Shown here piece after piece: positions 4,332 through 60,510 of a stretch of 64,000 nt of DNA (positions are counted from its first letter, which is position 1; the number at the start of each line of letters is the position of its first letter). A program made the position numbers and the translations under genes. The stretch is taken from positions 60,078,001 to 60,142,000 of the forward strand of contig OZ296652.1 of the NCBI GenBank assembly GCA_965655095.1, written 5' to 3'. The notes under the pieces were generated by a model, which ran no database searches, had not been told where the DNA came from, and saw nothing but the letters and a program-made list of their open reading frames with translations. Source of the DNA: Haplodiscus bocki (Eukaryota).

Positions 4332-5699
4332 TAATGGTTTAGTTATTATTCTTTTACATAATGTTCATGTCAAAAATCTGAAGGTAGTTTAAACGACGTG
4401 CGAAATTATGAATGAAAGTCTTAAACATGCGAAGAAGTGGTAAATTTAATCTGCAAATGTCACAAACCAACGAAACCACATTTCACTATCGGAACTCCCT
4501 CGATTTGTGACCATGGAGCTCAGATAAACTTTGCAAGTTTGCCGTAAAAATGCGCGCGGTGCTCAACAGTCGCGACTTCTCGACAGAGTCGGACATAGGA
4601 AGATAAGCAATTCCCTCAACGTGGTCTTTCTAACTGCAGAGCTGCTGCTTTTCAGTGACCGTTGGCTGTAACGAGCCAAATAAAATTGTCGTTTTCCGTC
4701 GTGAAAAATTTTTCGAAAAATTTCGTGAAAATATTCAACTCCTTGGGGCTTTTCCCTTTTCCTGAAACAGCACAAGAAGCGCAGAATTCATTTCTAACAG
4801 AGCAGAATCGTTGGTGCCCTGTATATCAAGTATTTGAGGTGTCACTGCGGTTAGATAGCCTACAGGTAGTTGAAGTGAATCCCTGTATCAGCCATTTTTT
4901 ACATGTTTTCAGATATTCGTCAATACATTCTTAAATTTATTGAAGAAAAAACAATTTTCCGATTAAATTATGGCTTTTTTTCTGATATGTGAAGTCATAT
5001 TTTCTCAAAACTTGATTATTTCCCGACCTAATCGAAACAAATTGTTCATTTTCAATTTTTAATTGTTAATTTGTCAGTTTTCACACTCACAATTCTCTTA
5101 AACTACCGGCTGGAATTCTTCCGTCAAAGTCTCCGCCATGGTACTTTTCCAATCAAAAATGGTTTTTTTGTGAAAGTCATTTGCCGTACCTTTGATCCAT
5201 CATTTCTGCGCCCCTTTGATGGAAAATATCGCAAAGCAACAGCGCTTTTTGTTAACTGTTTGACTGAAATATTCCACCTGTAAATTCAAAAATGTGATGT
5301 TAATCCCAGGGTTTGAACAAACACTGTAAAAGCGGCGCGTGCAAAGACACCTGCGATGGCCGCAGGTAAAGTGTTCCGCAGAAAAAAATTACCTGCAGAT
5401 GCAGGCAAAATCTCAGCAGGTAACGATTGCAGGTACATGAATACAGGAAGGAATGCGTTGCTTTTTGTAGGGGAACCTGTCCTTAAGAATTCGAAAATCT
5501 AGTGACCCAGAGGAGGACTGACCAAATAGTACTGAAGTATTTCAGCACGCAGTTCGTTACGTCCTTCAGAACTGAAGCAGCAAAAAACAGTTGAGGTGCT
5601 GTTTCGTTGTTAGGAAAAAAGAAGCCCAAATTCGAGGAAACAAAAATCTAAAGAAGAAAGACTGTAAAAAAAACCTTATTGGACTACACTAAAAGGTAA

Positions 5700-6560
5700 C
5701 CTGAACAAACATGAATCTGAAACTTGGTGAAGTAAAGGCACAATGAGGACTCATATCCGACGCACAACGAGGAGACCTACCACTCCGATGCAAATTTATA
5801 TCTTATGTCCGGCGTCTTCTGGTCAAGCTTTCCTGCGGTTAGTAATGATTCGACTCTATGGTTACTTCTGAAAACCAAACCGTCCGTTTGCCAAATTCCA
5901 ATGTTATGTGTCTCATGAAGCTCTACTCCGTTTATGGCAAGAGTTGTGTCCTGATAGGTGTTAGTGGACAATCTTATTAAACCTGCTCGTTGGTGGCCCT
6001 ACCTCTGACGAGAATGTGTTTCTGGCCTGCAAAGACTTTAAAAAAGTTGAGCTCCGCGAGATACATAAATATCTCCAAAACCTGGTGCTCATAAGTTTTC
6101 CTGACGTATATGGAGTAATTTGGATACAACTTCCCTGTAACTTTGCTGTGTTGGTGAAGATACTTGCATCTATCTTTGGGTTTAGTCTTTTTCATCTCTC
6201 AGGTTGACATTTTTCCGTATTGATTTACAACAAAAATGTTCAAAGGTGGACTCCACAGCTCATTTAACCACGAAAAGAATGACTTTGGAGCTTTTGGTTA
6301 AAAACATATCTCGTTGCATCATCTTCATGTCTGTATGGATTGAATGTTGCAAAAATTGCTTTAGTGTGGTACTGTTTTGATGACACCAAATGTTTTCGAT
6401 AATTAGTTTGATGGGTATTCAGTCCTGTTCTTTAATTTTGCCTGTAAGTTTTATCCATACAATTTTCTAAAGTCGACTGATGAGCTTCATCAATGCTATC
6501 CAAATTTACCTCCAATGTCAAGCCGTCTTTCTGTCTAGCTTGGTTGCAATTAGTGGTAAA
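5700..6560 (-). pseudogene. Highly degenerate LINE RT fragment nested in the CACTG element
   Basis: Minus-strand pieces VKFLPLIATK..., VFNQKLQSHSFRG, IFMYLAEL..KVFAGQK and TTLAINGVE occur in the expected RT order but are very diverged. Confidence 0.35.
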
Positions 6561-6725
6561 AATTTGACTCACCTGCATTACCAGCAAAAGCGGAAAATAT
6601 TACCAATTTTACCAGCAGAGCGACGCATCTAAAAGGACCCAGGATGCGCTTTACCTGTGGTATATGCAGATTACCGGCAAAAACAGGTGAAGGTACCTGC
6701 CTCTACAAGGCACGCACCTAACTTA

Positions 6726-7055
6726 AGTAGTAAGAGAGTGCGTCGATCAGGCGGGGTAGGTGGAAGACCCTCTTTGTTTTATGATAGAGTAAAGGCCCTG
6801 GGGCCCGACATGGATCCTGCACCCGTGTAGTAAGATAGGCTAAATTTTGGCAAGGTTTTAGGATAAGGCATAGCTTCGGCAAGATTTTAAGGTAAGCTAT
6901 AGTTCGGCAATGTATTAAGATAGAGGATCTGAGTCAATGTAATAAGATAGGGATTGTATGAAGATAGAGACCTGACTCAGTGTTCTAAGGTAGAGGCCGT
7001 CCGAGTTAAGCGAAGTCTTAAGATACGGAGGCGAATCTAGGTAGGGTTCAATTTT
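6726..7055 (+). repeat. Left terminal repeat (Polinton-like TIR) with 'cggcaatgtattaagatag'-type subterminal repeats
   Basis: AGTAG start, the atcaggcggggtaggtggaagaccc motif and repeated taagatag units. Mirrors 18716-19037. Confidence 0.8.
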
Positions 7056-7384
7056 GAGTTTTGTTTTTGGTTCCGTCAACGCATTAGGATCCTACAATTG
7101 TAATAAGAAAAACAAGTACGTTTCATAAGGTAAAAACATGGGCTCATAAGTGAACCAGTGGATAAACAATGAACTTCTTGGCCATCTTTTGGTACTGCAA
7201 CACGTACGTTGAGATAAAGTTGGATTTTTGGAAGTAAAAACACATTGTACACCGTCCTATTTTACGAACCGATAATTACCAATATCATTCCTAATCCATA
7301 CACTCGCATGAAACAATCAAAGTCACCTTATGCTAATTTAACTTAGAGGCATATCGTGTTGAAAATGTCTTTCGTGAAAGAAAC

Positions 7385-7412
7385 TGATTGATTGATTGAT
7401 TGATTGATTGAT
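7385..7412. repeat. (ATTG)6 microsatellite, mirrored as (CAAT)6 at 17970-17997
   Basis: Read directly; same copy number in both arms. Confidence 0.95.
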
Positions 7413-10400
7413 ACAATCCTAATCATACTGTCAGACTTATATGCCACGTAGTTCGTAGTTTTTCCTAGATTGCCCAATGTTTTTCATAGCTATTGCATTT
7501 TTAACTTGACTGACCATATAGATATTGGAACTCTTTTCAGTTGCTGCTCATGAAATAACAACAAGAACTTAACGCCAAGATTCAGAAAGACAATTAAGCA
7601 GTACTTCTGCCGCAAAGAGTCGGGAAGATTACAGAAGAAAGGTTTCATTGAACAACATTCAGCAACGGAGTCAGCAATACTGTAAAATACTGCTACAAAT
7701 TTGAGGAATTTGACAGATAAAGTAAGTTTTTACGCTCCGTTCGGGGTTGTGTACATAAATCAATGAATTTGAGGCCAGGCAATTATACTGAAAATTTTAG
7801 TATGAGAGTTTCAGTTTGATATTCAAAGAGCATAAAGACATCGTTTTCAAGTTTCGAGTTTGATGTATTTATATCTTAAGCTAAATAGCGCCGGATTGTT
7901 TCCAAATGAAAATGCAGTCAAGCTTCAACGGTCAATCGAGGAGACTAAAGAGGTATAGAGGGGCGAGTCCGGCAAGTTGTTGGGAAAATACGACAACGAA
8001 TACAATGAAGTGTTCCTGTTGAACCTGTCTTCATTTGCCGTCCAAATATGCTTCTTCATGTTTGTGTTCCACACTTTTCGTATGAAACGTTTTGGCTGTG
8101 ATTGACGGAAGGCATACCGATAACGAACGAGTAGCAAAATTTTCTGAGATGATGAAATGAGTTGTAAATTAAGCAAGTGGGCTGCAACAACGCAAAATTA
8201 ATAATGACTGTTCAGTTGCGGTAAGAAATTGCTAATATGCTATCACACTTCATGGAGATACCCTAAAAGGAAAAAAATTTTGAACATAAGCATCAAAAAT
8301 CGAAATACGTATGAATATCATAAAAAGGACGTCTGGCTCTCGTAAAATCAATCAAACTGTAATTATCAATCTCTCCTCTCAGCTTTGATACCAACAACAA
8401 GGCAAAGAAAACCTAATGAAAAAAGACCAATATTCGCGTGATGGCGATATTCTGTTTGACAAAAGCAGCCGAGTGGAAAAATAGGTGGAATAGGCGACAG
8501 ACTACGTACGAAAATCGACCAAGTAGAACAAATTCCCTTACGAAAAGGACCCATTGTCTAGGGGAAATTACTCGATTGGAATCTATCGATCTAATAAAAA
8601 GACAGCTTGTCTGAGATGATGATTTACGTTCATCAATTTTTTTTCATTTCGACTGTCAATCACCAGACCTCAATGAAAGGCAAACTTTGTTAAACAGATT
8701 GAAATATTGGTAAATATATTGAAAACTTACGATAACAAATTCAGAGAATGATGGACATAAACTGTTGCTCAACACAGAAAGAGCGAATTTACTGATCCCA
8801 TTGAAATCTACAAAAGTCAAACCACTGTGTTTTATTTTACAAAACTGAACAAATCAAGAAAAACCCTTTATCAAAATGTGAATTCTAATCAGTATTACAT
8901 ATTTCAAACCTCACACTCACACGTTTTGAAAAATTGATTTAAAATCTGACACTTTGTGGAACTTTTGACTGAAAACTTGACATTATAATAGTTTCCATTC
9001 AAAATCTGACCTTCTGCAAAGCTTTTAAATTAAAAACTGCCACCTTGAAAACTTTTTGAATGAAATTTGATTTGTCTTAAACTTTTTGAATCAAAAACTG
9101 ATTTTTATTTTTCTTTTCGGGTTCTCACTGAATAATAGATTCCGTTGCTAAGATACAGAAAAAACAACTTTTTGCACAAAACAAAGTGAAATAGACGCCT
9201 TTCTTTATTTTCGCTTCAAAGTTGGGAATCGTTTGTAACATAACAGCAGCAGTGTGATTGTTAAATGTATTTTTTGAACTAAGGACTCTTAAGAACAAAA
9301 TAGTGTTAAAAATTGTATCAAATACCAAAAAAGGAAACACTTGCCATATTTGAAATTCGTTGTGTCTCGGACCAAAAGTTAAATGTGGTCCATATAAAAT
9401 AGGTATGAATCAGTTAAAATTGTATAAAAGCAGCAACTTATTACTTTGAAAAAACATTCGTCAAAAGTCGTTCTCAGCAAGAGCAACCCGTTTCTCCCAG
9501 CTACCGACGTACCAGACCACTGGAGAAATTTCTGACGAAAACTTGCCTACAATGAGAATTCAGTGCTCAAACTTTGTCGGAATTGAATGAATTTTACCTT
9601 TTCAATAATGTAATGAACAACTATAGAAAAACGTAAGAGTTTCACTATTATCCTACAAGGCTATCAATTTGTTCCCTTTTGTGCCCAGAAGTTGATCTTT
9701 TATCGAATTATGGTCAAAATTTCAAGAAGACGGTTTCTTTCGATGACATGATGCACCTCATTGCTGAGGAGAGAATCGTACCCCATGTAGATTTTGATTT
9801 TGGTCTTATTTTCTATCCCGGAGCACCCTCAAAAATTAAAAAGATCACCCGAGAACAGAAAAATTTTTCCGGAACCTTTGAAAAACCCAAGTGCATCCCA
9901 AGTAACAAACTAACACAACTGTTCTGTTGAGGAGGAGCATACAACTTTTAGCTTTCTGAGCCTTTACAATTTACGGACATGGATCTAGCAGCTCTTATGT
10001 CATTCATCCGCACTATTGATAGGGACACTATGTCTACTCGGTAGGTATCCTAAAACATTAACTCACCAACCTAGAACAGACCTATATCCGATGTTCTCTT
10101 CATGGCGCCTGATGGAAAGCAACAGGAAGGGTTTGCGCGTCAGTTTTGCATTCTTTCACAAAGATCACTTACCGGACGGACGATTGAACAAAAGAGTTGC
10201 TACAAATGAAAAATTGAATGATCTTTGGAAGCCCCGAGCAAGGTATGGAGTACCACCTTTTGTGTTGAACTGTAGTCGTAGTTAACTGTAGCTATTTGAT
10301 TTTTTTGTTTGATTTATATTGTTTGTTGGTGCAATGTTTTTGTTGTGTTTGTTCAAAATTTAATTTTTTTTCGTATTCTTTGATGATTTTGATTTGGAAG

Positions 10401-11689
10401 TAACACCTCAACAACAACTACTAATTAAGATAACATTCCCATAAGCAGCCGAAGCCGCAACCTGTTTTGGTACATTGCAGACGTTCATCCTACCGAAAAC
10501 ATTGGTACAAACCATCCTCAGCTTCCACTCTCCGTAACCTACTTCAATGCTTGAACAAGTTGGTCCACTGCTTTATCATAACGCATGACTCTATCATAGG
10601 AAAGCTATTAAAACACACTACATACCTCTATACATTGCAAGTCCAATAGTCTCTTTTAAAATTTTGTTGAATACCCTTCCTTATCTAAGTATAATGATGT
10701 ACCATCTCAGATCAGATTGGCTGTCTGAATTTGTCTTATTACGCTAATCACCGTTTGGAGCCCCGAAATCAATCCCAACATATTTACTTGACAAAACTAA
10801 CCCACACCATACATCAAAACTTTACCGAAACGTACCCCATTTAATTAAATGGACGAAAACTTGGAAAACTGCACAATAATTAGGTTAAAGTTCTGACACG
10901 TTGTAAAACTTTCAATTCAGAATCTGAGACGTTGTAAATCACCTTCTCTGAAATTTTTTATTTTTAATTTGTTTTTTGAATTTTGACTAAACGATCTTTT
11001 TTACTTCCAACGTTAATAACAAGTTGTTGTAAACAGAAGAAGTAACAACAATGTCTAAATAGGATTTCGTCGCCAGATGTAAACCTAAAAGCTGCCCCAC
11101 ATCGATTCGCCCCTCAACCTGGAAAGAATAGCGTTACGACGACACAGGATTTTAACATTGACTAACGGCAAAAATCTGTGGAGTATAAAAAGCACTAAAT
11201 CTAGCAGATCAACAACGTTTCTTTAATTACACAACTGTGAAAACACACGAAAACGCACTTTAATTGAAAATCTATCCATTTTCTTCAATTTTTTTGCGTG
11301 AGTAACAAGCAAAACAGGAACGACGATGGATAGTAGCTGACACTACCACAGAATTTGCCTAAATTTGGGTGCGGGACGTTACTTACCACTGTCTTGACAC
11401 CTATCAAAACGGAAGATGCTTGATCGCAAATCGAGTTTAGGACATGTGTGGTTCGAATATTGGCTTAGGTAACCCATACACTCTGGACCTCATAATTCAT
11501 CTTCAACTCTTGCAAATTTCGATGAAAATCTACGTTTTTGAACAAGTGTACAACCTTCTCAGCTTCTAGGCTAACTCTTCGTTTTTTATTCCTAATACAT
11601 TGAAGGTGTCATGCAATCGGTTTCTGCCGAAAGTTTACCCCTTTCTCAAGTCAATGACTGGGTCACCCAAATCCATATCATACAATCTT

Positions 11690-12615
11690 ATATCACCGAA
11701 CTATACCTTGCCCTAAAGCAATAGTGGTGAGTATACCCACGTTTAAAACTTTGCTGAGGTATACCCTGACTTGTTGAAATGTTGAGCTTTACCGAACGCT
11801 ATTACAATGCTGCAGTATATTCTACCTTAATACTTTGTTGAGCCGTTGATAATTTTAGACCTGTGCTGAGTTGTATCTCGTTTTTTAAAATTGCTGAGCC
11901 ATACCCAATCCTAACACATTGTTGAGGTATACCCTAAATTTTTACCCTGCTGAGCTGTTCCCAATGGTACAACCTCGCCAAAGTAGATCCTGACCTATTA
12001 GGTTGTTTAGCTATTCTCAATCTTAAAACAAGGCTGTCGTATATATAGCTTATTACAATGCTGAGCTAATCCTATTCTTATAACTTTGCTGAGGTATATC
12101 TTGTCTTAATACATTGCTGAGCTATACGAAATCCTCACACATGGGTGAGGTTAACGCGACTTTATTACCTTGCTGAGCTATTGTGAATCTTAATACATTG
12201 GTGAGATATACCATATCTCAACACATTGATGAGGAACACCATTTCTTATTATCTTTTTGAGCTTTTCCCATTCCTAATACAGTGCCGAGATAAAACTTGA
12301 TTTTTTACGTTGCTCAGCTTTTGCCAATCTTGAAACTTTGTTGAGTTTAATCTTACCTTATTACATTGCCGAGCTTTTCCCTTTCCTTATACACTGGTGA
12401 GTTGTACCCATTCCTATCACAATCATGAGTTATACCCTGTTCTTTTAATTTTTAATGAGTTGTTGTCAATCTTAATTCTTTAAATCCACTCCAATTACAA
12501 TGCTCAGCTTTGGCCATTCCTGAGGCATTGATGACGTATACCTTGTCTTTTTAAAATGCTGAGATATACCTTATCTTAATACGTTGTCCAACTATGACCT
12601 ATAATATTACATTGA
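11690..12615 (-). repeat. Degenerate ~33-bp tandem array (ttgctgagctataccctatcttaatacat-like), left of the palindrome centre
   Basis: Recurrent ttgctgag/ttgttgag and cttaatacattg words at ~33-bp spacing. Same motif family as the TIR subterminal repeats. Confidence 0.85.
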
Positions 12616-12789
12616 TGTCGGTTTTTGCAAACGTTGTCGGCAGCCAATCAGACTCGAATTTTGCGTCACCTAATAGCACCCGAAAGCTCTCAGCTAGGGT
12701 GGATGTTCCTAGGATCTGAGATAAGTTTTACCGGATTGACTCAATAGTGAATTCTGATTGACTGCCGACAACGTTTCCCGAAAACCGAC

Positions 12790-13560
12790 AGCAATGTAGT
12801 ACGATGGGTGAGCCCTCAGCAATGTAGTAAAGCAGGTATTACCTCAGCAGTGTTTCATGATTGGCAATATCTGAGCATTGTAAAAAAGCAGAATATACCT
12901 CGACAATGTATTAAGATTGGGAACAGCTCAGAATGATAATGAGATAGGGTGAACCTAATCAATGTGTTGAGATTTGGTATATCTCACCAATGTATTAAGA
13001 TTGGGGATAGATCAGCAAGGTAATAAAGTAGCGTGTACCTCAGCCATGTGAGAGAATTGCGAATAGCCCAGCAATGTAGTAAAACAAGCTATACCTCAGC
13101 AAGGTTATAAGAATGAGATTAGCTCAGGAGTATAGTAAGCTAGGGCATACGACAGCAATGTTTTAAGATTACGAAAAACTGAACAACATAATAAGTCAGG
13201 ATCTACCTTGGCGAGGTGTTTGCATTGGGAACAACTCAGCAAAGTAATAAGTAAGGGTATACATCCGCATTGTGATGGGATTGGGATTTAGCTCCGCAAT
13301 ACAATGAAACATGAAATAACTCTGTAAATTTCTAAGAATATGAAGAGCTCAGCAGAGTAATAAAGTAGAGTATACTTCAGCAATGTAATAACGTTAAGTA
13401 TATAGCTCAACAATATAAGAGGAAAGCCATAAGTCAGCAGTGCATTACGATAGCGTATACTCGCCAGCGATGTTTAAAATCAGGGTGAACTTAAGCAAGG
13501 TGGAAATTTTTAGTATGTGTTTGGCTGCCCGAGGCAGTGCATTGAGATAGGGTTAAACTT
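12790..13560 (+). repeat. Degenerate ~33-bp tandem array (ctcagcaatgtattaagat-like), mirror of 11690-12615
   Basis: Recurrent ctcagcaatgt and caatgtattaagat words. Confidence 0.85.
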
Positions 13561-15657
13561 TCGGCGGGAACCGAGTGCATGGGACCGTCGGTGTATAAGG
13601 GTTAGAAAAACGATGAAAAAGTCTGGAAGCTGAGGAGGTTGTACACTTATTCAATAACGTAGGTTTTCCTTGAAATTTGCAAAAGTAGAAGATAAATTTT
13701 GTGTTTGACAGTTTATGGGATACCTAAGGTAATACTTGAGCCACACATGTCCTAAACTCGATTTGCGATCAAGCATCTTCCATTTTGACAGACGTCATGA
13801 CAGTGGTAGGTAACGTCTTTCACCCATTCTTGGGCAGATTCTGTGTGAGTGTCAGCTACTCTCCATCATCGTTCTTGTTTTGCTTGTTTCTCACACAAAA
13901 AAGATGAAGAAAATCGATGGAATTTCAGAAAAAGTACGTTTTCTTTTGTTTTGACAGTTGTGTTTTTAAAGAAACGTTGTTGATCTGCTGTCTTTTGTGC
14001 TTTTTATGATTCACAGAGTTCTGCCGGAAGCCCATGTGGAAATTGTGCGTTGTCATAACGCTATTTTTTCCAGCTTGAAGGGCTAATTGAAGTGTGGTAG
14101 CTTTTAGGTTTACATCTGGCGACGAAATCCTATTTAGACATTGTTGTTACTTCTTCTGTTTACAACAACTTGTTATTAACGTTGGAAGTAAAAAAGATCA
14201 TTGAGTCAGAACCTGAAAAACAAGTTAAAATCAGATTTCACAGAAGATGTTTTACAACGTGTCAGATTTTGAAATGAAAAATATAAAACTTGTCAGAGTT
14301 TTACCCTACTTCCTGTACGGTTTGCCAGGTTTTCTTCTATTTAATTAAATAGGGTTCGTTTCGGTAATGTTCTGATGTATGGCGTGAGTCACTTTGGTCA
14401 AGTTATTGTGTTGGGATTGATTTCGGTTCTCCAGACGGTGATTAACGTAATGAAACATATTCAGACAGCCAAACCGATCTGAGTGGCTTCATCAATATAC
14501 TTAGATAAGGAGGGGTATTCAACAAAGTTATAGTGGAGACTATTGGAGTTGCAATGTATAGAGGTGGTTAGTCTGTTTTAATAGCTTTTCTTTGATAGTG
14601 TCATGCGTTAAGATAAAACAGAGGGCGGACCTGTTCAAGTATTGAAGTAAGTTACAGGGAGCGGAAGCTGAGGATGGTTTGTACCAATGTTTTCGGTAGG
14701 ATGAACGTCTGCAATGTACCAAAACAGGTTGCGGCTTCGGCTGCTTATGGGAATGTTATCTTAAATAGTAGTTGTTGTTGAGGTGTTACTTCCAAATCAA
14801 AATCATCAAAGAATACGAAAAAAAATTAAATTTTGAACAAACACAACAAAAACATTGCACCAACAAACAATATAAATCAAACAAAAAAATCAAATAGCTA
14901 CAGTTAACTACGACTACAGTTCAACACAAAAGGTGGTACTCCATACCTTGCTCGGGGCTTCCAAAGATCATTCAATTATCCATTTGTAGCAATTCTTTTG
15001 TTCAATTGTCCGTCCGGTAAGTGATCTTTGTGAAAGAATGCAAAACTGACGCGCAAACCCTTCCTGTTGCTTTCCATCAGGCGCCATGAAGAGAACATCG
15101 GATATAGGTCTGTTCTAGGTTGGTGAGTTAATGTTTTAGGATACCTACCGAGTAGACATAGTGTCCCTATCAATAGTGCGGATGAATGACATAAGAGCTG
15201 CTAGATCCATGTCCGTAAATTGTAAAGGCTCAGAAAGCTAAAAGTTGTATGCTCCTCCTCAACAGAACAGTTGTGTTAGTTTGTTACTTGGGATGCACTT
15301 GGGTTTTTCAAAGGTTCCGGAAAAGTTTTTCTGTTCTCGGGTGATCTTTTTAATTTTTGAGGGTGCTCCGGGATAGAAAATAAGACCAAAAATCAAATTC
15401 TACTTGGGGTACGATTCTCTCCTGATCAATGTGGTGTATCATGTCAAAGAAGGAAACCGTCTTTTTGAAAATATGACCACAATTTGATATAAGATCGACT
15501 TCCTGGCGCAAAAGAGAACAAAATGAAACCTTTGTAGGATATTAGGGAGAGTCTTGGGTTTTCTGTAGCTGTACATCACTTTATGGAAAAAGTAAATTTC
15601 ATTCAATTAATACAAAACTTGAGCTCTGGAGAAATGACCAGTGCTTTGGTACTTTGG

Positions 15658-16085
15658 TAGCAGGTGGAAGCGAGTTGCTGTTGCTGAGAACGATTTTAAA
15701 GAATGCTTTTTCAGAGTAGCAAATTGTTGCTTTTATACAAATTTTACCGATTTATACCTATCTTATAAGGACCACATCTACATTTTTGGTCCAAGACTCA
15801 ACAAATTTCAAACAAGGAAAGTGCTTCCCTTTTTGGTATCTGGTGCTTCTTTTAACACTAAGTTGTTCTCCAGTAGCTGGGAGAAACGAGTTGCTGTGGC
15901 TGAGAACGACTTTTGACGAATGTTTTTTCAAAGTAAAAAGTTGCTGCTTTTTTACAATTTTAACCGATTCATACCTATTTTATATGGACCACATTTAATT
16001 TTTGGTCCGAGACCCAACGAATTTCAAATATGGCAAGTGTTTCCTTTTTTGGTATTTGATACAATTTTTAACACTATTTTGTTCT
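15658..16085. repeat. ~215-bp tandem duplication present only in the right arm
   Basis: cgagttgctgt(t/g)gctgagaacga occurs at ~15671 and ~15887 (ORF 15641..15916 contains KRVAVAENDF twice). The left arm has one copy (~9290-9505). Confidence 0.85.
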
Positions 16086-18335
16086 TCAGAGTCCTTAGTT
16101 CAAAAAATACATTCAACAATCACACTGCTGCCGTTATGTTACAAACGATTCCCAACTTTGAAGCGAAAATCCAGAAAGGCGTCTATTTCACTCTGTTCTG
16201 TGCAAAAAGTTGTTTTTTTGTATCTTAGCAACGAAATCTTTTATTCAGAGAGAACCCGAAAAAAAAATAAAAAAAAACAGTTTTTGATTCGAAAAGTTTA
16301 GGACAATTCAAAATTCATTCAAAAAAATTACAAAGAGGCAGTTTTTAATTTAAAAGCTGAGCAGAAGGTCAGATTTTGAATTGAAACTATTTAAAAGTCA
16401 GGTTTTGAATCAAACAATTTAGAACGTGTCAGATTTTATCTCAAATTTTTAAAACGTGTGAGTGTGAGGTTTTGAATTAGTAACATTGATTAGAATTCAC
16501 ATTTTGAATTAGAGAGTTTCTTGATTTGTTTAGTTTTGTATAATAAAGCACCATGGTTTATTTTTTGAAGACTTTGATTGGATCAGTAAATTCACTCTTT
16601 CGGCGTTTAGCAATAGCTTACGCCGTTTACTCTATGAATTCGTTATCGTAAGTTTTCAACATCTTTGCTAATTTTTTTCAGTTTGATAGATGAATTTTTC
16701 CTTTTATTAAGGTCTGGTGATTGACAGACGAAATGGAAAAAAACTTGATGAACGTAAGTCATCATCTCAGACAAGCTGTCTTTTTATTAGATCGATAGAT
16801 TCCAATCGAGTAATTTCCCCTAGACAATGGGTCCTTTTCGTAAGGGAATTTGTTCTACTTGGTCGATTTTCGTACGTAGTCTGTCGCCTATTCCACCTAT
16901 TTTTCCACTCGGCTGCTTTTGTCAAACAGAATATCGCCATCACGCGAATATTGGTCTTTTTTCATTAGGTTTTCTTTGCCTTGTTGTTGGTATCAAAGCT
17001 GAGAGGAGAGATTGATAATAACAGTTTGATTGATTTTACGAGAACCAGACCTCCTTTTTATGGTATTCATACGTATTTCGATTTTTGATGCTTATGTTCA
17101 AATTTTTTTCCATTTAGGGTATCTCCATGAATTGTGATAGCATATTAGCAATTTCTTACCGCAACTGAACCGTCATTATTAGTTTTGCGTTGTTACAGCC
17201 CACTTGCTTAATGTACATCTCGTTTCATCATCTCAGAAAACTTTTGTTACTGTTTCATTATCGTTACGCCTTCCCTCGATCACAGCCAAAAATTTTTAAC
17301 TGAAAAGTGTGGAGCAAAAACATGAAGAAGCATATTTTGACGCCAAGCGAAGTGAAGTTCAACAGGATTAATTCATTGTATTCGTTGTCGCACTTTCTCA
17401 ACAACTTGCCAGACTCACTGCCCCTATACCTCTTTAGTCTCCTCGATTGACCGTTGAAACTTGACTGCATTTTTCTTTGAAAACAATCCGGTGCTATTTA
17501 GCTGAAGATATAAATACATCAAACTCGAATCTTGAAAAAGATGCCTTTATGCTCTTTGAATAACAAACTGAAACTCTCATACCAAAATTTTCAGTATACT
17601 TGCCTGGCCTCAAATTCATTGATTTATGTACACAACCCCGAACGGAGCGTAAAAACTTACTTTATCTGTCAAATTCCTCAAATTTGTAGCAGTATTTTAC
17701 AGTATTGCTGACTCCGTTGCTGAATGTTGTTCAATGAAACCTTTCTTCTGTAATCTTCCCGACTCTTTGCGGCAGAAGTACTGCTTAATTGTCTTTCTGA
17801 ATCTTGGCGTTAAGTTCTTGTTGTTATTTCATGAGCAGCAACTGAAAAGAGTTCCAATATCTATATGGTCAGTCAAGTTAAAAATGCAATAGCTATGAAA
17901 AACATTGGGCAATCTAGGAAAAACTACGAACTACGTGGCATATAAGTCTGACAGTATGATTAGGATTGTATCAATCAATCAATCAATCAATCAATCAGTT
18001 TCTTTCACGAAAGACATTTTCAACACGATATGCCTCTAAGTTAAATTAGCATAAGGTGACTTTGATTGTTTCATGCGAGTGTATGGATTAGGAATGATAT
18101 TGGTAATTATCGGTTCGTAAAATAGGACGGTGTACAATGTGTTTTTACTTCCAAAAATACAACTTCATCTCAACGTAACGTGTTGCAGTACCGAAATTTG
18201 GCCATGAGTTTCCATGTTTATCCATTGGCTCATATATGAGCCCATATTTTCACCTTAGGAAACGTACTTGCTTTTCATATTACATTTGTAGTACCTTAAT
18301 ATGCTGACGGAACCAACAACAAAATTCAAAACTGA

Positions 18336-18706
18336 TTTTTTTTACGGACATCCCATATTCATTCATTGCACACATGTGTTAGCATAGCAATGGAGTATCC
18401 GCAGGGGTCATAAATAACCATAGTTGTCATATTTAACCTAATTGTTATCCGTGGGCGGGCCTCTAAGAAAAATCAATTCAATTTTTTTTCTGCCATAAAA
18501 TCTCAGACAGAAAATGGCATAAAATGGGTCCTCAAAACCGACTCCCTATTTATTTACACTGCAAAACGCTATAGTTTAAAATTATAATTTACCCATCATG
18601 TAAAATATCCGCTGACGTCCTGAAAGATCCAGCTACATCATAAAGAAAATCCGTGTGGAAACCTAAAAAAAGTCACTAAAAATTCTCGAAAAAAACCTCA
18701 GAGCGC
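18336..18706 (-). mobile_element. 371-bp poly(A)-tailed insertion (SINE-like or 5'-truncated retroposon) with 9-bp TSD
   Basis: Absent from the left arm. Flanked by caaaactga (18327-18335) and caaaattga (18707-18715). T8 run at 18336-18343. Confidence 0.75.
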
Positions 18707-18715
18707 CAAAATTGA

Positions 18716-19037
18716 ACCCTATTTAGGTTCGACTCCGTATTTTAATACATTGCCTAACTCGGACGGCCTCTATCTTAAAACATTGAGTCGGGTCTCTATC
18801 TTCATACAATCCCTATCTTATTACATTGACTCAGATCCTCTATCTTAATACATTGCCAAACTATAGCCTACCTTAATACACTGCCGAAGCTATACCTTAT
18901 CCTAATACCTTGCCAAAATTTAGCCTATCTTACTACATGGGTGCAAGATCCATGTCGGGCTCCAGGGCCTATACCCGATCATAAAACAAGGAGGGTCTTC
19001 CACCTACCCCACCTGATTGACGCACTCTCTTGCTACT
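18716..19037 (-). repeat. Right terminal repeat (Polinton-like TIR)
   Basis: Reverse complement of 6726-7055; ends ...ttgctact. Confidence 0.8.
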
Positions 19038-19836
19038 CACGTAGAATTCACGCGATAGCAGGTGAGTCTACCCGCGGTTTGATAGCAAATTGCCTGCATT
19101 TGCGGGTATTTTTGCCTGTGATTGCAACTTTTCTTGCCTGCGCTTGCGGGTGTTTTGTCCTGTGTTTGCTGGTTTCTTTGCCTGAGTTTAAAGGTGTTTT
19201 TGCCTGCAATTGCGGGCGTTTTTGGTTGCAATTGAGGCTCTTTTTGCCTGCGTTTGCAGGTATATTTGCCTGCGTTTGCGGGTATTTTTTTCTGCGGTTG
19301 CTTGTGTTGTTGCTTGCAAATTACATAATGCAGTCTAACTTACCTGCAAATTGCAGGTGGATTTACCCGCGGTGTGATAGCAGATTGCCTGCAATTGCAG
19401 GTAATTCTGTATCGAATTACAGGTTTTTTGCCAGCGATTGTTCGGGTATTTATTCTTGCGTTTGCATTTATTTTTGCCTGCGTTTGGCGGGTATTTTTAC
19501 CTGCGATTCTAGTGTTTTTGCCTGCAAGTTGCATGTATTTTTGCCTGCAAAAGTAAGCAATTATGCCTGCCATTCGCGGGCAAATTCCCATGAGTTCCCC
19601 ACGTGAAAATACCACTAAAACACTCGTTACATTCAAGTAAATTTACATGCGGCTGGAAGCAATTCGCGTGTTTTCTGCGCGAAGTGCTTGCCGCGTAGAC
19701 GCGGGTAAATTTACCTGTTGTTACAGATGAACTGCAGGTAACGCATGTAAGCTGCGTGTGAAGCCTTTTTACATGCAATCCGCCGGTAAAGTTACCTGCA
19801 CTAGCAGATAACCTTGCACGCGTCAGTTTTACAGTG
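19038..19836. repeat. ACCTGC/TTTGCCTGC-rich subterminal repeat field of the CACTG element
   Basis: Repeated tttgcctgcgtttgcgggtatttt-like units and small acctgca/tgcaggt inverted words. Confidence 0.8.
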
Positions 19837-30400: not shown

Positions 30401-31260
30401 AGTAGAAGAGAAATAGATAGGTGAGCAGATCAGGTGAGGAGGGGGTGGAGGCCCCTCCATGTAAAATGATAAAGTTTAAGAGCTCGGTTGAGCCTAAAAC
30501 CGAGAAGGGGCCTCCGTCCCACGGGAGAGCTCTCTAGTGATTTTCAATCTACTGATACTCGATTCTGCTTGGTTGCCGAGGGTTTTTGTGCTGGATTTTG
30601 ATTGGCTCTTCCAATTTTTTGGTTGTGGGCGAAAACAACGGCAATATCTTAAGATAGGAAATGATCTTCGGTGGGGTACTAAGATACTGATTTTCAGTAA
30701 CGTATTGGTAAAAATTTTAGGGTTGTGCGACCTATGAGGATACGCAGTGGGGATTTAAGACTCGTTTATGGCACTGTGAAATAACTTTTTTCGAAATCAA
30801 AGACGATGCTTCAAGATTGGAAATGATTTTCGGTATTGTATTGAGATGGGGAGTGACTTTCGGTATTGTATTAGTAGGAGCTATATGGTTTTGCAACGTG
30901 AAAAGATACGGAGTGGGGTTTAATGACTCCTTGTCGGCACTGTGGGACTACTTTTTGTTCAAGGAAATGGGCTTTTACCAAGAATTTTTCAGGCGTACCT
31001 GTCATTGCCCACTACCCGTGCGGATTCTTTATTACGCCTGTGGGTACCATGTTACGCCTTGGGTTTTTGTTTTGACTTATTGGCATCTGAAAATATCGCT
31101 CGACTACATATTGAGACAGTGTATTGAGAAGGGGTAGAGTTCAGTCATGTAAAAGGATAGTGTACAGTTGAGTAATGTATTAAGATAGGAAATAGTTCGG
31201 CGGTTATTAGCATAAATTTTACTTAGGTTATGCCTCGGGAAAAGTTGCTAGACGGAAAAA
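30401..31260 (+). repeat. Polinton-like TIR pointing rightwards, with decayed subterminal repeats
   Basis: agtagaagag...gtgagcagatcaggtgaggagggggtggaggcccc resembles 6726ff. Repeats include cggtattgtattgagatgggg and aatgtattaagatagg (~31174). Confidence 0.7.
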
Positions 31261-31689
31261 TTTGAAAAAGCGTATAGAATGTAAAATTTTGACTGTCGAA
31301 ACGCAAAAGAAATAAGGGCGGAAGTGCTAGCAAGTGTCACTAATTACAAAAAAAACTATTTGGAAAAAACATGAAATGAAAATCTGTCAGTCACTCTTTC
31401 CTTCTTATGGATACTATTGTGAGTTATTGCTTTGAAAAGAAACAAGTTAATTAGAGAAAAATTAATTAGAAGCGACAAATAATAACAAAAACATTGTACA
31501 ACATGCACACTTACAAAGAAATAATACGGTTGAAAACCCTACAAACAAGTAAACACGTGAGAAAATACTTAGCCTGTAATATGTCTGTTAAATTGAAACA
31601 AGAAGCAATCGATTTCACGAGAAGTTAAATAGAACTTAGCAAAGCAACGAACACAACACAAGGTTTTTATTGATGAAAAATGAACTTAC

Positions 31690-33130
31690 AAACTCAGTGG
31701 ATGTGTGTAAATTCCATCGTTTTCAAATACCTTTTTTAATTAGAATTACAACGATCCACGTTTGGTTTCTTCATAAGTTGCAACTGTGTGATCTTTTGTC
31801 CGAAACCTCTGTTTGTTAATGTAATTTTCACTGCATCATCAAGAACTTTGCGAAACTTCTCCAAATGTTGATCACTCTTCTGCTCTAGTTTTGGCCTATA
31901 AGGACCTTTGCTGCTGACCTCGAGGTTGTTCGACACAACATCTCGGCAGCAATAAATTTTGCCAAAAAGACTCAGCATTTCCGGACACCTGAATTCTTTT
32001 TTGAAGAGAGCCAGCTCTCTTTTGTCTTGTTTCTTGTATTTCGCTCAAACATTTCGTTGGAAGAATTCTCCTGAAATCATCACAGTTTGTGAATTTCATC
32101 GGCTGTTGAATGCAATTGGTCAGTTTTTTTTTCAGCAAGAGCTAAGTGGAGGGAATCGTTGTTCGTTTCAATTTCTTCCAAATTGTTGATGTTACAAAAA
32201 TTTGTCAAAAAAGTGGGATTAGAGCTCCATTATCTGTAGTTTTTAATAAAAATGAATGAAAAATCCGTTAACAACAGGTTCTTCCTGTGCAACTTCCGTT
32301 TTTGCAAGTTCTACTTTGTAGAGTTGATCGTTTACATGATCTAGTTTTTCGAAAAAATGGCTGAATATAGCACTGTGCATTTTATCATCGTTCAAGTACT
32401 TTGTTAACCTGCGTTGACTCAGATCCATCATTTGATAGCAATCGGACCTACTCGCTAACTATTTTATTGTTTTATTGTCTCAACGACTATATTGAATTTG
32501 GGTTCCGGTCACCTAGTCTTCTCGCATCCACAGCTGAATATAGAAAGTTGTTGAAGCAATTTTCTGCAAGGAACTCAACGAAGCGGTGTACTTTTTGTAC
32601 AAACGAGACCCAACTCAATATAGAACAACAGCAGAGGAGTGATGCGTGATTTATTTTGTATCTGTAGGCTTAAAATTAGCATTTTCTGAGGTTGGGACAT
32701 CAAGTCTTTTTCTTCTGCCTACCATTTCTTCAGTTTGCCAATATCTTCCCGATTGACTAAAGTGTTTTTGAAAAAAAAGGAAAGTTTCTCAAATGTGGTT
32801 ACCAAAAGTTGCGAAACTTTTTGTCACTCTGAAAACAACCAAACAGGTTTCCGCTCTTTATTTCTTCCAGAAGTTGATATTCTGCAAGTGAACATCCGTA
32901 CGAAAACTTTTCTCGTTTTTGTTGTTTAACACTATTGTCTGTTTTGTACTGTCTCCATCACTCACATTCCCATTCTCAAAAAGTGAAGCCGAAAAAAGGG
33001 AACAAGTGCTACCCATTAAAATTTTCTTCATATTGAAAGAAGAAGAACCGCACGAGCTATCAGTCACTTTCATCCACTCCTGCGGATACTGTTGTGACTT
33101 AAGGCTTTGTGAAAAAATTGTTCTACAAAT
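31690..33130 (-). pseudogene. pPolB C-terminal half remnant (Polinton)
   Basis: NFPFFFKNTLVNREDIG..MSQPQKMLI, MMDLSQRRLTKYLNDDK...LYKVELAKTEVAQEEPVVNGFFI, KIYCC...SSKG...TNRGF and ENDGIYTHPL. The 3' end points to the TIR at 30401. Confidence 0.85.
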
Positions 33131-33131
33131 T

Positions 33132-33780
33132 AACAAGTTATTTAGAGAGTACTAATAAAACCGAAAAATTGTATTTTCTGCACACTTACATTGAAATTGA
33201 GAAAATAAAAAGCCTACAAACAAATGAAAACATGTTTAGCGTGTGTTATCTATTTTATATTGAAATACGCACCAAACGAACAAACGAATCCACGAAAAAT
33301 TGAATAGAAAGTAATAAAGCAATAAACACAACAGAAAACTTTTTTGATAGAAAAATGAAATCAAAAGTTCAGTAAGTGTGTGTGAATTTCATTGTCCTCC
33401 AGTATCTTTTTTGAATGGATTTACGATAAGCCTCGTTTAATTTGCTCATACATTGAAACGATGTAAACATTCGGCCGAAAAACTATTTTGTTGTGTAATG
33501 CTTACTATATCAACAAGAACTTTGCGCTCAATTCCTAAAGAACGCTCAATGATATTTAAATTTGAAGAAAATTGCCGCCAATGTCACTCCAATTCTCGCA
33601 CACAAAAAATCAAATAAAAAAAACATAATACCTGTTGAAACTTGACTGCCTGCAGTTTCGACTGCAGGATCGGCATCACACGCACTACCGACAAATTTAA
33701 ACAAGCATCCCATTTGGAATTTGGTTCGAAAGTAGAGCGACGACAACGGAAAAAATCTAGTTCCTTGCCTCGGAAACGTC
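33132..33780 (-). repeat. Diverged direct duplicate of ~31441-32050 (pPolB 3' end and downstream)
   Basis: aacaagtta.ttagaga, tgcacacttaca, cctacaaacaa, aaagcaa..aacacaaca and tcaagaactttgcg/acaagaactttgcg are shared at ~1.69-kb offset. Confidence 0.75.
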
Positions 33781-53904: not shown

Positions 53905-53952
<48 letters not shown>

Positions 53953-59838: not shown

Positions 59839-60237
59839 ACTTCAAGTCTTTTTTTGATGCAACGCCAAAAGTCTCTCCCTAAATTAAAACACTGCCGAAG
59901 CCACTCTCTAACTCAATACACTGCCGCAAATGATTTTCTTGGAACATTGCCCAAAATACTGGGCTCGGGTTTCTTATTACATTGACTACTGAGCACGCAT
60001 GGCGAGGGCATTGCCCTTATTAATACATTGACTGCTTATGCCGAGAACCAAAAGGCTTTTGCCGAGAACCCTCGCAATGCCTGCTCAGTAGTCAATGTAT
60101 TAAGATACCCGAGACCAGTGTTTTGGGCAATGTTTCAAGAAAATCATCTTCAGCAGTGTATTGAGTTAGAGAGTGATTCCGGCAGTGTTTTAATTTAGGG
60201 ATAGATTTTTGGCGTTGTAACAAAAAAGAGTTGAAGT
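59839..60237. repeat. ~400-bp fold-back (arms 59839-60008 and 60069-60237, ~60-bp spacer) built from TIR-type subterminal repeats
   Basis: For example ccctaaattaaaacactgccg/cggcagtgttttaatttaggg and tacattgactactgagca/tgctcagtagtcaatgta. Confidence 0.9.
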
Positions 60238-60239
60238 AT

Positions 60240-60510
60240 ACGCTATCTTAATACATTGACATCATGACTTAATGAACTGCCAACCTAACTCAAATTCTTA
60301 GAGTCGCCAAAAACCAAGTCGGCAGCCAATCAGAACCTTCCTTAACAACTCACAGGTGAGCATGAACAACGATTTAGGCGCCGGCTGGCCTTCCTCTGGA
60401 TTCTCTGATTTTCAGGAAAACCAGACGCTATACCCTTTCTTAATACCTGGAAGACCATCCACCCCCTTTCCACCTGACTTGCTCACGTAAATATTATTTT
60501 TGTCCTTGCT
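60240..60510 (-). repeat. Polinton-like TIR pointing leftwards
   Basis: Reverse complement gtgagcaagtcaggtggaaagggggtggatggtcttcca resembles 30421ff. Contains tatcttaatacattgac and gtcggcagccaatcaga (60318). Confidence 0.65.

What the first reader, a model, noticed from the sequence alone, without database searches (positions are those of the whole stretch)
6726..19037. 12.3-kb Polinton-ended palindrome: an apparent integrated inverted-dimer ('snap-back') element
Seen: two ~6-kb arms are reverse complements around a ~93-bp spacer (12656-12748). The ends are AGTAG.../...CTACT, the flanks aactta and cacgta match 4/6, and the whole unit interrupts an ACCTGC-repeat element that resumes on both sides. 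Known: Polintons have 5'-AG...CT-3' TIRs of roughly 0.1-1 kb, 6-bp TSDs and protein-primed strand-displacement replication. Inference: the complete palindrome was integrated as one unit. It would be a non-autonomous fold-back replicon analogous to snap-back defective viral genomes, mobilised in trans by Polinton pPolB and integrase. I am not aware of such a class having been described for Polintons.
Basis: partly seen in the sequence, partly recalled or inferred. Interest (0 to 1): 0.85.

Follow-up and report, generated by a model that had tools for sequence, protein, structure and literature searches.

The report
Old inverted dimer with Maverick-type ends
A real, old 12.3-kb DNA palindrome made of two tail-to-tail copies of a gene-less 6-kb repeat whose tips look like those of Maverick/Polinton virus-like transposons; the one testable locus cannot show whether it ever moved as a unit.

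Summary
Positions 6726-19037 form two reverse-complementary arms of about 6 kb around a centre of 68-100 bp. The ends are sharp: AGTAGT on the left, AGTAGC (reverse complement) on the right. The flanks AACTTA and CACGTA match 4/6.

New findings:
- The arms differ at 738 aligned positions (background 82% identity). Five tracts are about 99% identical, including one perfect 559-bp run. The structure is therefore old and patch-wise gene-converted, not an assembly fold-back.
- No Polinton gene or any other protein domain is detectable in the arms.
- Each arm carries arrays of a 28-bp repeat at both of its ends, in inverted orientation. An 18-nt motif that lies 160-180 bp from the tip in two relatives in this window lies at both inner arm ends, 98 bp apart, with no tip sequence between. 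The palindrome is thus a tail-to-tail dimer of an almost complete unit.
- AGTAGT is the commonest published end motif of vertebrate Mavericks.
- Compared with the host element's own paralogous arm, the interrupted copy has exactly six extra bases, which fits a 6-bp target duplication.

Still open: whether the dimer formed before integration or in place, and whether other copies exist. No tool here reaches the source genome. Verdict: a plausible new variant of a known kind, of moderate interest.

The parts
6720..6725 (.). Left copy of the putative 6-bp target-site duplication (AACTTA)
   Evidence: 4/6 match with 19038-19043. One search shows exactly 6 extra bases relative to the host's paralogous arm.
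6726..12652 (+). Arm A of the palindrome: an almost complete unit with no detectable gene
   Evidence: arm alignment; no ORF above 102 aa, no Pfam hit better than E=0.011.
6726..6822 (+). Left terminal segment T, beginning AGTAGT; found only at the outer ends
   Evidence: The end motif matches PMC8097293.
6823..7056 (+). Outer-left array of the 28-bp subterminal repeat (core CAATGTATTAAGATAG), forward orientation
   Evidence: period 28. (35 matches in the window against 0.83 expected).
11822..12614 (-). Inner array of the same repeat in arm A, inverted relative to the outer-left array
12636..12653 (+). c motif (GTCGGCAGCCAATCAGA-type) at the inner end of arm A
   Evidence: 4 matches in the window against 0.01 expected. 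In the relatives at 30.5 and 60.3 kb it lies 160-180 bp from the terminus.
12653..12752 (.). Non-palindromic centre (68-100 bp by criterion); no similarity to the terminal segment T
   Evidence: as single-stranded DNA it folds into a hairpin with a stem of about 45 bp and a loop of about 100 nt, z = -9.
12752..12769 (-). c motif at the inner end of arm B, facing the first copy 98 bp away
12753..19037 (-). Arm B of the palindrome (reverse complement of arm A)
12792..13550 (+). Inner array of the 28-bp repeat in arm B
15667..16089 (.). 216-bp tandem duplication present in arm B only
18332..18711 (.). 380-bp segment present in arm B only; probably a deletion in arm A
   Evidence: One search shows weak similarity of 18523-18593 to the relative at 30862-30932.
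18737..18940 (-). Outer-right array of the 28-bp repeat
18941..19037 (-). Right terminal segment T (reverse complement begins AGTAGC)
19038..19043 (.). Right copy of the putative 6-bp target-site duplication (CACGTA)
7205..7818 (.). Gene-conversion tract 1 (pairs with 17564-18177; 4 differences in 614 columns; contains the perfect 559-bp run)
8331..8643 (.). Gene-conversion tract 2 (pairs with 16737-17050)
9246..9411 (.). Gene-conversion tract 3 (pairs with 15966-16131)
9793..10532 (.). Gene-conversion tract 4 (pairs with 14657-15397; 9 differences in 741 columns)
10984..11100 (.). Gene-conversion tract 5 (pairs with 14092-14208)
5323..6725 (+). Left part of the interrupted host element (CACTG terminal repeat, CCTGC-type subterminal repeats; EnSpm/CACTA-like, no gene found)
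19038..19836 (+). Right part of the host element (22-bp repeat array, ends CAGTG at 19836)
30401..31214 (+). Second family member, end region: begins AGTAGA, then a T-like core, the c motif at 30563-30580 (minus strand) and forward repeat arrays
59839..60506 (-). Third family member, end region: a 400-bp palindrome of the repeats, the c motif at 60318-60335, a T-like core at 60421-60486, and an end near 60506

Best explanation
Positions 6726-19037 are an old, gene-less, tail-to-tail inverted dimer of an almost complete unit of about 6.1 kb. The unit belongs to a repeated family whose tips are of Maverick/Polinton type: 5'-AGTAGT, about 95 bp of unique terminal sequence, then arrays of a 28-bp repeat.

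Shown:
- Both outer ends are identical-type termini with sharp borders.
- Each arm has repeat arrays at both of its ends, in inverted orientation.
- Both arms break off at the same place, just past the near-terminal c motif, and no terminus lies between them.
- The structure sits inside a CACTG-type non-autonomous element, and the flanks fit a decayed 6-bp target duplication.
- The arms have diverged about 18-20% and have been homogenised in five patches by arm-to-arm gene conversion.

Inferred:
- The dimer arose from one linear copy. This happened either by self-primed fold-back (copy-back) synthesis near its 3' end, or by tail-to-tail joining of two sister copies that had lost their last 65-160 bp.
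- Because it then carried a correct terminus at each end, it was integrated as one unit by an integrase that makes 6-bp duplications, as Polinton integrases are reported to do.
- It is now a fossil. Its only likely present activity is arm-to-arm recombination and hairpin formation.
For: Arms and ends.

Age and conversion: background identity is 82.2% (K2P 0.20), against five tracts of about 99% totalling 1952 bp. The longest perfect run is 559 bp, against a maximum of 99 in 1000 permutations.

No genes: none of 131 reading-frame pieces of at least 40 aa had a Pfam hit better than E=0.011.

Repeat orientation: the 28-bp motif gives 35 matches against 0.83 expected. It runs forward at 6823-6967 and 12792-13550, and reverse at 11822-12614 and 18737-18940.

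c motif: 4 matches against 0.01 expected, at 12636(+), 12752(-), 30563(-) and 60318(+). In both relatives it lies 160-180 bp from a T-like end.

No terminus in the centre: z <= 1.4 on both strands.

End motif: (AGT)2, perfect 6-bp duplications and terminal repeats of 46-1447 bp are the published hallmarks of vertebrate Mavericks (PMC8097293). A third family end in the window also starts AGTAG.

Target duplication: 4/6 match at exactly k=6 and shift 0. The host's uninterrupted paralogous arm has 4 nt between two anchors where the interrupted copy has 10.

Borders: similarity drops from 91% to none at the AGTAG borders. The host's own arms are only 65% alike and are not symmetric about the palindrome.

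Precedent: expanded, gene-containing terminal repeats of about 2 kb are already reported for butterfly polintons (10.1101/2025.02.07.637071).
Against: Only one locus could be examined. No other copy of the arms or the centre was found, because no collection available here holds the source genome.

No Polinton gene occurs in the arms or elsewhere in the window, so the link to Polintons rests on a 6-base end motif and a decayed duplication.

The 4/6 match alone is weak (p about 0.04). The length bookkeeping uses a paralog that is only about 65% identical and contains indels.

Arrays of short subterminal repeats are more typical of cut-and-paste transposons (my knowledge).

The outer ends lack the c motif that the two relatives carry next to their tips, so the canonical unit is inferred from distant relatives (about 66% identity).

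Nothing in the sequence separates dimerisation before integration from dimerisation in place.
Confidence: 0.5

Rival explanations
1. A single unit of about 6.2 kb integrated normally, with both termini and a 6-bp duplication. The palindrome then formed in place. A break in the last 160 bp or so of the element was repaired by fold-back priming at the short inverted repeat. The arm was copied back, and the new strand was captured on the surviving terminal repeat at the right junction. In effect this is an in-situ expansion of the terminal inverted repeat to full length.
For: This gives exactly the observed sequence: flush ends, an intact duplication, symmetric truncation just past the c motif, and an asymmetric centre of 68-100 nt flanked by a short inverted repeat that folds as a hairpin. 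Only one locus is known. Patchy conversion shows that the two arms do interact in the chromosome. Expansion of terminal repeats is documented for polintons and for protein-capped linear Streptomyces replicons (PMC7205883, listed; abstract only).
Against: It needs 6 kb of fold-back synthesis that ends precisely by annealing in a terminal repeat of about 330 bp. If the canonical right end carried the c motif next to its tip, as both relatives do, the present right outer end is a copy of the left end and not the original right end. The original must then have been replaced flush with the junction.
Confidence: 0.3
2. The family is not Polinton-related. It would be a foldback-type, long-inverted-repeat, cut-and-paste DNA transposon moved by a transposase that binds the 28-bp subterminal repeats. 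Examples of this type are Drosophila FB and Galileo, sea-urchin TU elements, and the palindromic non-autonomous elements of nematodes. The AGTAGT end would be coincidence.
For: The structure is a whole-length inverted repeat with arrays of short repeats at the ends and no coding capacity. A relative at 59839-60237 is also a small palindrome of the same repeats. No Polinton gene is present anywhere in the window.
Against: The duplication lengths of those families (7-9 bp, my knowledge) are not seen. The flanks match 2/8 and 2/9 (my own count from the flank sequences; neither length reached the reporting threshold), while k=6 gives 4/6 and the 6-nt bookkeeping fits. An exact (AGT)2 start has a chance of about 1/4096 per end and matches the published Maverick motif. 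A third family end also starts AGTAG.
Confidence: 0.15
3. Two independent insertions of related units landed next to each other in opposite orientation.
For: The background divergence of 18% could reflect two already diverged family members. The family is frequent locally, with three loci in 64 kb.
Against: Both arms end at the same position relative to the c motif. No terminus or second pair of duplications lies in the centre. An insertion of one unit into the tail of another would leave a T sequence in the middle and an extra tail at the right end, and neither is present.
Confidence: 0.03
4. The structure is an assembly artefact: a fold-back chimeric read, or a false inverted join of two loci.
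For: Long palindromes are a known failure mode of assemblers. No reads are available here.
Against: The arms differ at 738 of 5751 aligned positions and by five indels of 22-380 bp, whereas a fold-back read would give identical arms. The two flanks complement each other as the left and right parts of one host element, and the junctions fit a 6-bp duplication. There are no N runs within 14 kb.
Confidence: 0.02

Closest known systems
Maverick/Polinton elements (vertebrate Mavericks as described in PMC8097293)
   Same: A 5'-(AGT)2 end motif, a sharp inverted terminus at both ends, and flanks compatible with a 6-bp target duplication. The core terminal repeat of about 330 bp (T plus the 28-bp array) lies within the published range of 46-1447 bp.
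   Different: None of the defining genes is present (protein-primed polymerase, integrase, capsid, protease, ATPase). The inverted repeat covers the whole 12.3 kb instead of a few hundred bp. Arrays of the 28-bp repeat also occur internally.
Butterfly polintons with terminal inverted repeats of about 2 kb that contain the hexon and adenain genes (preprint 10.1101/2025.02.07.637071)
   Same: The terminal inverted repeat is expanded far beyond the usual length by copying one end onto the other.
   Different: Those elements keep a unique coding centre and are young and polymorphic. Here nothing unique remains except 68-100 bp, no gene is present, and the arms are about 18% diverged.
Snap-back / copy-back defective genomes of linear DNA viruses, and palindromic deletion derivatives of protein-primed linear plasmids (my knowledge; not retrieved here)
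   Same: An inverted dimer carrying the same replication terminus at both ends, with a short asymmetric turn-around.
   Different: Those are episomal and usually contain only one sub-genomic end of a coding parent. This one is chromosomal, each arm is a nearly complete non-coding unit, and no parent is known.
Foldback-type and palindromic non-autonomous DNA transposons (Drosophila FB and Galileo, sea-urchin TU, nematode PAL families; my knowledge)
   Same: Whole-length or very long inverted repeats, short tandem repeats near the ends, and no coding capacity.
   Different: Their end motifs and duplication lengths (7-9 bp) differ. Here 8- and 9-bp comparisons fail, while 6 bp fits.
Chromosomal palindromes kept similar by arm-to-arm gene conversion (for example sex-chromosome palindromes and plastid inverted repeats; my knowledge)
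   Same: Tracts of near-identity in an otherwise diverged pair of inverted arms.
   Different: Here conversion is patchy and covers only about a third of the arms, and there is no gene content to preserve.

Membership tests
Polinton/Maverick | [quoted passage not shown] | tested here: not met
   None of 131 reading-frame pieces of at least 40 aa from 6.6-19.6 kb had a Pfam hit better than E=0.011. None of 99 pieces of at least 75 aa from the parts of the window scanned outside the palindrome (the first 6.2 kb, 18.8-44.4 kb and 59.3-62.0 kb) had a hit better than 0.0013. At best this is a non-autonomous relative.
Polinton/Maverick | Conserved end motif 5'-(AGT)2 or (AG)3 with the complementary 3' end (PMC8097293) | tested here: met
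   The left end is AGTAGT. The right end, read as reverse complement, is AGTAGC, one substitution away. A relative's end at 30401 reads AGTAGA.
Polinton/Maverick | 6-bp target-site duplication | tested here: inconclusive
   AACTTA against CACGTA matches 4/6. There are exactly 6 surplus bases relative to the host's paralogous arm. Both results suit a decayed duplication but neither proves it.
Polinton/Maverick | Terminal inverted repeats of about 0.05-1.5 kb bounding a unique coding body of 12-25 kb | tested here: not met
   The inverted repeat spans 2 x about 6 kb with only 68-100 bp between the arms, for a total of 12.3 kb.
Polinton/Maverick | Terminal sequence shared with a gene-bearing Polinton of the same genome (needed to call it a non-autonomous derivative) | not testable with these tools
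   The source genome is not in any searchable collection. Patterns from the terminus gave 0 hits in the metagenome and viral contigs and one chance-level hit in a bacterial genome.
Snap-back / copy-back defective genome | Inverted duplication of one genome end, so that both termini are the same end | tested here: met
   Both outer ends have the same structure (T followed directly by the 28-bp array, with no c motif) and are 90.7% identical.
Snap-back / copy-back defective genome | Derived from, and dependent on, an identifiable complete parent genome | not testable with these tools
   No parent is present in the window, and the genome is not searchable.
Foldback-type long-inverted-repeat DNA transposons | Long inverted repeats built partly of short tandem repeats, non-coding | tested here: met
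Foldback-type long-inverted-repeat DNA transposons | Target duplication of 7-9 bp (my knowledge of FB, Galileo and TU) | tested here: not met
   The flanks match 2/8 and 2/9 (my own count from the flank sequences). One search reported no flank comparison within two mismatches at these lengths with the element borders unshifted; its only 8-mer report (6/8) needs the borders moved 3 bases inward and includes element bases.
EnSpm/CACTA-like (the host element, not the palindrome) | CACTA/CACTG termini, subterminal repeat arrays, 3-bp duplication | tested here: inconclusive
   The ends are CACTGTAAAA.. and ..TTTTACAGTG, 22/26 identical, with 22-bp arrays. The flanks AAA and AAC match only 2/3. No transposase was found.

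The most novel reading that the evidence does not exclude
This locus is one fossil member of an undescribed kind of non-autonomous element: a full-length inverted dimer ('all terminal repeat') replicon with Maverick/Polinton termini. It would be made by copy-back or tail-to-tail joining of a linear intermediate, and then copied and integrated in trans by Polinton enzymes. If so, the same arm-centre-arm junction would recur at many loci, each with its own 6-bp duplication.
Probability: 0.25. Interest if true: 0.7.

Novelty: new variant of a known kind. Interest (0 to 1): 0.45.

Why it matters
Polintons/Mavericks are thought to replicate as linear, protein-primed DNA, but direct traces of that episomal phase are scarce in host genomes. 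An integrated inverted dimer with correct tips at both ends would be a sequence fossil of a replication error typical of such linear replicons. It would also show that gene-less passengers can use the Polinton end signals.

Independently of that reading, the locus is a clean example of a 6-kb palindrome that has survived about 20% divergence while exchanging tracts of several hundred bp (longest 741 bp) between its arms. If the palindrome instead formed in place, it illustrates how a transposon's terminal repeat can grow to swallow the whole element.

Tried and rejected
**Looking for other copies**
- The 221-aa frame across the right junction is not on record.
- Ten arm frames are not in the 15-billion-protein collection.
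- A 102-aa arm frame has no homologue.
- Terminus patterns of 19-26 bases gave 0 hits in the metagenome contigs (two scans) and 0 in the viral contigs.
- They gave one 30-bp match in a yak-rumen bacterial genome, which is at chance level for a 20-mer in 596 Gb.

**Looking for genes**
- Pfam scans of all frames of at least 40 aa in the arms, and of at least 75 aa in the scanned parts of the rest of the window, found nothing.
- Rfam and tRNA scans were empty.
- A pogo-like transposase remnant that I thought I saw by eye near 20.4-21.0 kb was not confirmed by Pfam.

**Looking for a hidden terminus in the centre**
- The terminal 100 bp against 12640-12770 on both strands gave z <= 1.4.
- The segment between the c motif and the tip of the 60-kb relative against the centre gave z < 0.

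**Other checks**
- Alternative duplication lengths of 2-11 bp, with border shifts of up to 3 bases either way: only k=6 at the observed border is worth noting.
- Homology beyond the AGTAG border between the two relatives is not significant (138/1000 shuffles).
- GC-biased conversion: the tracts have 36.6% G+C and the background 36.5%, so there is no signal.
- A larger palindrome that includes the host flanks is rejected. The host arms are 65% alike, asymmetric in position, and separated from the arms by a sharp loss of similarity.
- PNAS 2006 (Kapitonov and Jurka, PMC1450207) is not held in the library. What I say of it is from memory or from papers that cite it.

- In one search I joined the five high-identity tracts into one in-memory string, and the remaining positions of arm A into another, only to count G+C.
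- Nothing was printed or saved beyond the two percentages, and I did not repeat it.
The consensus lines that the alignment tools printed by themselves were not used.


Full report
**1. The observation**

The window is 64 kb with 31-44% G+C (per-kb range) and two N runs far from the finding, which I left untouched. An inverted-repeat search and a BLAST of the two halves confirm a palindrome from 6726 to 19037:
- 6726-7056 pairs with 19037-18707 at 90.7%.
- 7048-9504 pairs with 18335-15873 at 91.9%.
- 9292-12373 pairs with 15869-12815 at 83.9%.
- 12605-12652 pairs with 12801-12753 at 88%.

The unpaired centre is 68-100 bp, depending on the criterion. The left end reads AGTAGTAAGAG from 6726. The right end, read inward from 19037, reads AGTAGCAAGAG. 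The six bases outside are AACTTA and CACGTA, a 4/6 match.

**2. Not an artefact, and old**

A global alignment of the arms has 5751 ungapped columns with 738 differences, plus indels of 22-380 bp. A fold-back read or a mirrored assembly would give identical arms.

Identity along the arms is very uneven. Five tracts together cover 1952 bp at about 99%, including a perfect run of 559 bp. They are 7205-7818, 8331-8643, 9246-9411, 9793-10532 and 10984-11100. The remaining 3717 columns are 82.2% identical (K2P 0.20). With the differences shuffled, the longest perfect run never exceeded 99 bp in 1000 trials.

The simplest reading is an ancient duplication whose arms still exchange tracts of several hundred bp (the longest 741 bp) by gene conversion. 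G+C does not differ between tracts and background (see the slip declared under 'tried and rejected'). Transitions and transversions are about equal (317 against 344), which I cannot explain.

**3. No genes**

No open frame in the arms exceeds 102 aa. All 131 stop-to-stop pieces of at least 40 aa between 6.6 and 19.6 kb were scanned one by one against Pfam. The best E-value was 0.011, which is chance level for that many queries.

The same is true of 99 pieces of at least 75 aa from the scanned parts of the rest of the window. Those parts are the first 6.2 kb, 18.8-44.4 kb and 59.3-62.0 kb; the later units of the tandem array and the last 2 kb were not scanned. There is thus no polymerase, integrase, capsid, protease or ATPase remnant to count as broken. 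The element is simply non-coding as far as these tools see. Rfam and tRNA scans were empty.

**4. Anatomy of an arm**

Tandem Repeats Finder reports a 28-bp repeat at the outer ends (6827-6922 and 18840-18938). It reports related 28/84-bp repeats at the inner ends (12009-12292 and 12904-13082).

The 16-nt core of that repeat occurs 35 times in the window with up to 3 mismatches, against 0.83 expected. Its orientation is:
- forward at 6823-6967;
- reverse at 11822-12614;
- forward at 12792-13550;
- reverse at 18737-18940.

Each arm therefore carries inverted arrays at both of its ends, which is the architecture of a complete terminal-repeat element. The first 95 bp or so (segment T) occur only at the outer ends. 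T has no significant similarity to the centre on either strand.

**5. Two relatives in the same window define where the arms break off**

The repeat core also marks two other loci. At 30401 a T-like sequence begins with AGTAGAAGAG. It is followed inward by an 18-nt motif ('c') at 30563-30580 and by forward repeat arrays up to about 31200. At 60.3-60.5 kb the mirror arrangement is found: repeats, c at 60318-60335, a T-like core at 60421-60486, and an end near 60506.

The c motif has four matches in the window against 0.01 expected. The other two are at 12636-12653 (+) and 12752-12769 (-), the innermost parts of the two arms.

In both relatives c lies 160-180 bp from the tip. In the palindrome the two c motifs face each other only 98 bp apart, with no tip between them. 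Each arm is therefore an almost complete unit that lacks only its last 65-160 bp or so, and both arms stop at the same point.

This symmetric truncation argues for a single dimerisation event. It argues against two independent insertions, which would also have left a terminus in the middle and an extra tail at one end. Similarity between the two relatives does not extend significantly beyond the AGTAG position, so that position is the family's end.

**6. What the palindrome sits in**

The flanks belong to a repeat-rich element:
- It has CACTG...CAGTG terminal repeats at 5323 and 19836 (22/26 identical).
- It has 22-bp CCTGC..GCGGG arrays.
- It has internally inverted arms: 6605-6717 pairs with 19793-19684 at 65%.

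This explains why the ACCTGC-type repeat 'resumes' on both sides and why the two flanks look inverted relative to each other. It is not an extension of the palindrome. Similarity falls from 91% to nothing at the AGTAG borders. The host arms are far more diverged than the palindrome arms. Their positions are also asymmetric, 8-120 bp from the left border against 646-755 bp from the right.

**7. Target duplication**

Each was compared separately with the host's uninterrupted paralogous arm (reverse complement of 19700-19630). The left flank aligns through 6717. The right flank aligns from 19040, with 14 of 16 bases matching. The paralog has 4 nt between the two anchors, where the interrupted copy has 8 + 2 = 10.

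The surplus of exactly six bases is what a 6-bp duplication predicts. It agrees with AACTTA/CACGTA being two decayed copies, since one to two mismatches are expected at 18-20% divergence. The paralog is only about 65% identical and has indels, so this is supportive rather than conclusive.

**8. Comparison with what is known**

Barreat and Katzourakis (PMC8097293) report for vertebrate Mavericks:
- conserved 6-bp end motifs, the commonest being 5'-(AGT)2//(ACT)2-3';
- perfect 6-bp duplications;
- terminal repeats of 46-1447 bp;
- sizes of 12.7-24.6 kb.

The palindrome's left end is exactly (AGT)2 and the right end differs by one base. A third family end in the window starts AGTAG. That is a specific match, about 1/4096 per end by chance, and it makes 'Polinton-ended' a fair description.

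Membership as a Polinton fails on the defining genes (PMC5499653 abstract) and on architecture. At most this is a non-autonomous relative.

Terminal repeats expanded to about 2 kb and containing capsid and protease genes have been described in butterfly polintons. Growth of the repeat is therefore known, but a full-length inverted dimer was not found in the literature I could search.

Other analogues are known to me but were not retrieved here: snap-back genomes of linear DNA viruses, palindromic derivatives of protein-primed linear plasmids, foldback-type transposons, and palindromes homogenised by gene conversion.

**9. Mechanism**

Shown: the structure is an inverted tail-to-tail dimer with identical-type termini, sharp borders, a probable 6-bp duplication, considerable age and patchy conversion.

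Inferred: a linear copy that had lost its own second tip regained one by dimerisation. This could have happened by self-primed copy-back near its 3' end. The centre folds as single-stranded DNA into a stem of about 45 bp with a loop of about 100 nt. Alternatively, two sister copies could have been joined tail to tail. The product then had a valid terminus at each end and could be integrated as one unit.

The main rival is that a single unit integrated first and the dimer arose in place. A break near the tail would be repaired by fold-back synthesis, and the new strand captured on the surviving terminal repeat. Both routes give the same sequence, and only other loci or orthologous sites can separate them. 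I put about 0.5 on the first route and 0.3 on the second. About 0.15 goes to the family being a foldback-type cut-and-paste transposon unrelated to Polintons. Two insertions and an artefact together get a few percent.

**10. Limits**

The arm frames are not in the protein collections. Exact patterns from the terminus found nothing relevant in the metagenome, viral or prokaryote collections. The organism remains unidentified.

**11. Verdict**

This is a real and rather handsome structure with well-supported Maverick-type ends. It is a new variant of a known kind, not a demonstrated new class. Interest is moderate (0.45). It would rise to about 0.7 if the same dimer proved to be multi-copy.

Noticed in passing
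window 41128-59426: A tandem array of about six copies of a 3.07-kb unit, 92-99% identical; the best adjacent pair is 98.9% identical. Each unit carries an (AGAC)n microsatellite. The N run 56903-57046 lies inside the array.
   Followed up: partly
window 36597-38190 versus 39876-41110 and 45399-45696: Another, much older inverted similarity (70-73%), between the DNA just left of the tandem array and parts of the array unit.
   Followed up: no
window 30401 and about 60506: Two T-like family ends face each other 30.1 kb apart and enclose the tandem array. They could be the two ends of one very old element, but they are only about 66% alike and their flanks (CAAAAT and TGCTTT) match 1/6.
   Followed up: partly
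window 59839-60237: A 400-bp palindrome (arms 159 nt, 89% complementary, 60-nt centre) built of the same 28-bp-type repeats, directly beside the 60-kb family end. Fold-back arrangements seem to recur in this family.
   Followed up: partly
window 5323-6725 and 19038-19836: The host is a CACTG...CAGTG element with 22-bp CCTGC..GCGGG arrays. The arrays show a higher-order period of about 295 bp (19055-19282 against 19350-19580, 72%). A second, weak end-like sequence lies at 6551. The 3-bp flanks match only 2/3.
   Followed up: partly
window 18332-18711: The 380-bp segment found only in arm B is weakly similar to 30862-30932 in the 30-kb relative. It is therefore more likely a deletion in arm A than an insertion in arm B.
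   Followed up: partly
window 6726-12400 versus 19037-12855: Outside the converted tracts the arms differ by 317 transitions and 344 transversions. This ratio is unusually low, and I cannot explain it; alignment noise in the repeat arrays may contribute.
   Followed up: no
L001 1960-1989: A 20-mer from the terminus matches a yak-rumen bacterial genome contig over 30 bp only. About one such hit is expected by chance in 596 Gb.
   Followed up: yes
window 31602-31852 and 33278-33526: A direct repeat of about 250 bp at 72% identity, just before the N run 33915-34114.
   Followed up: no
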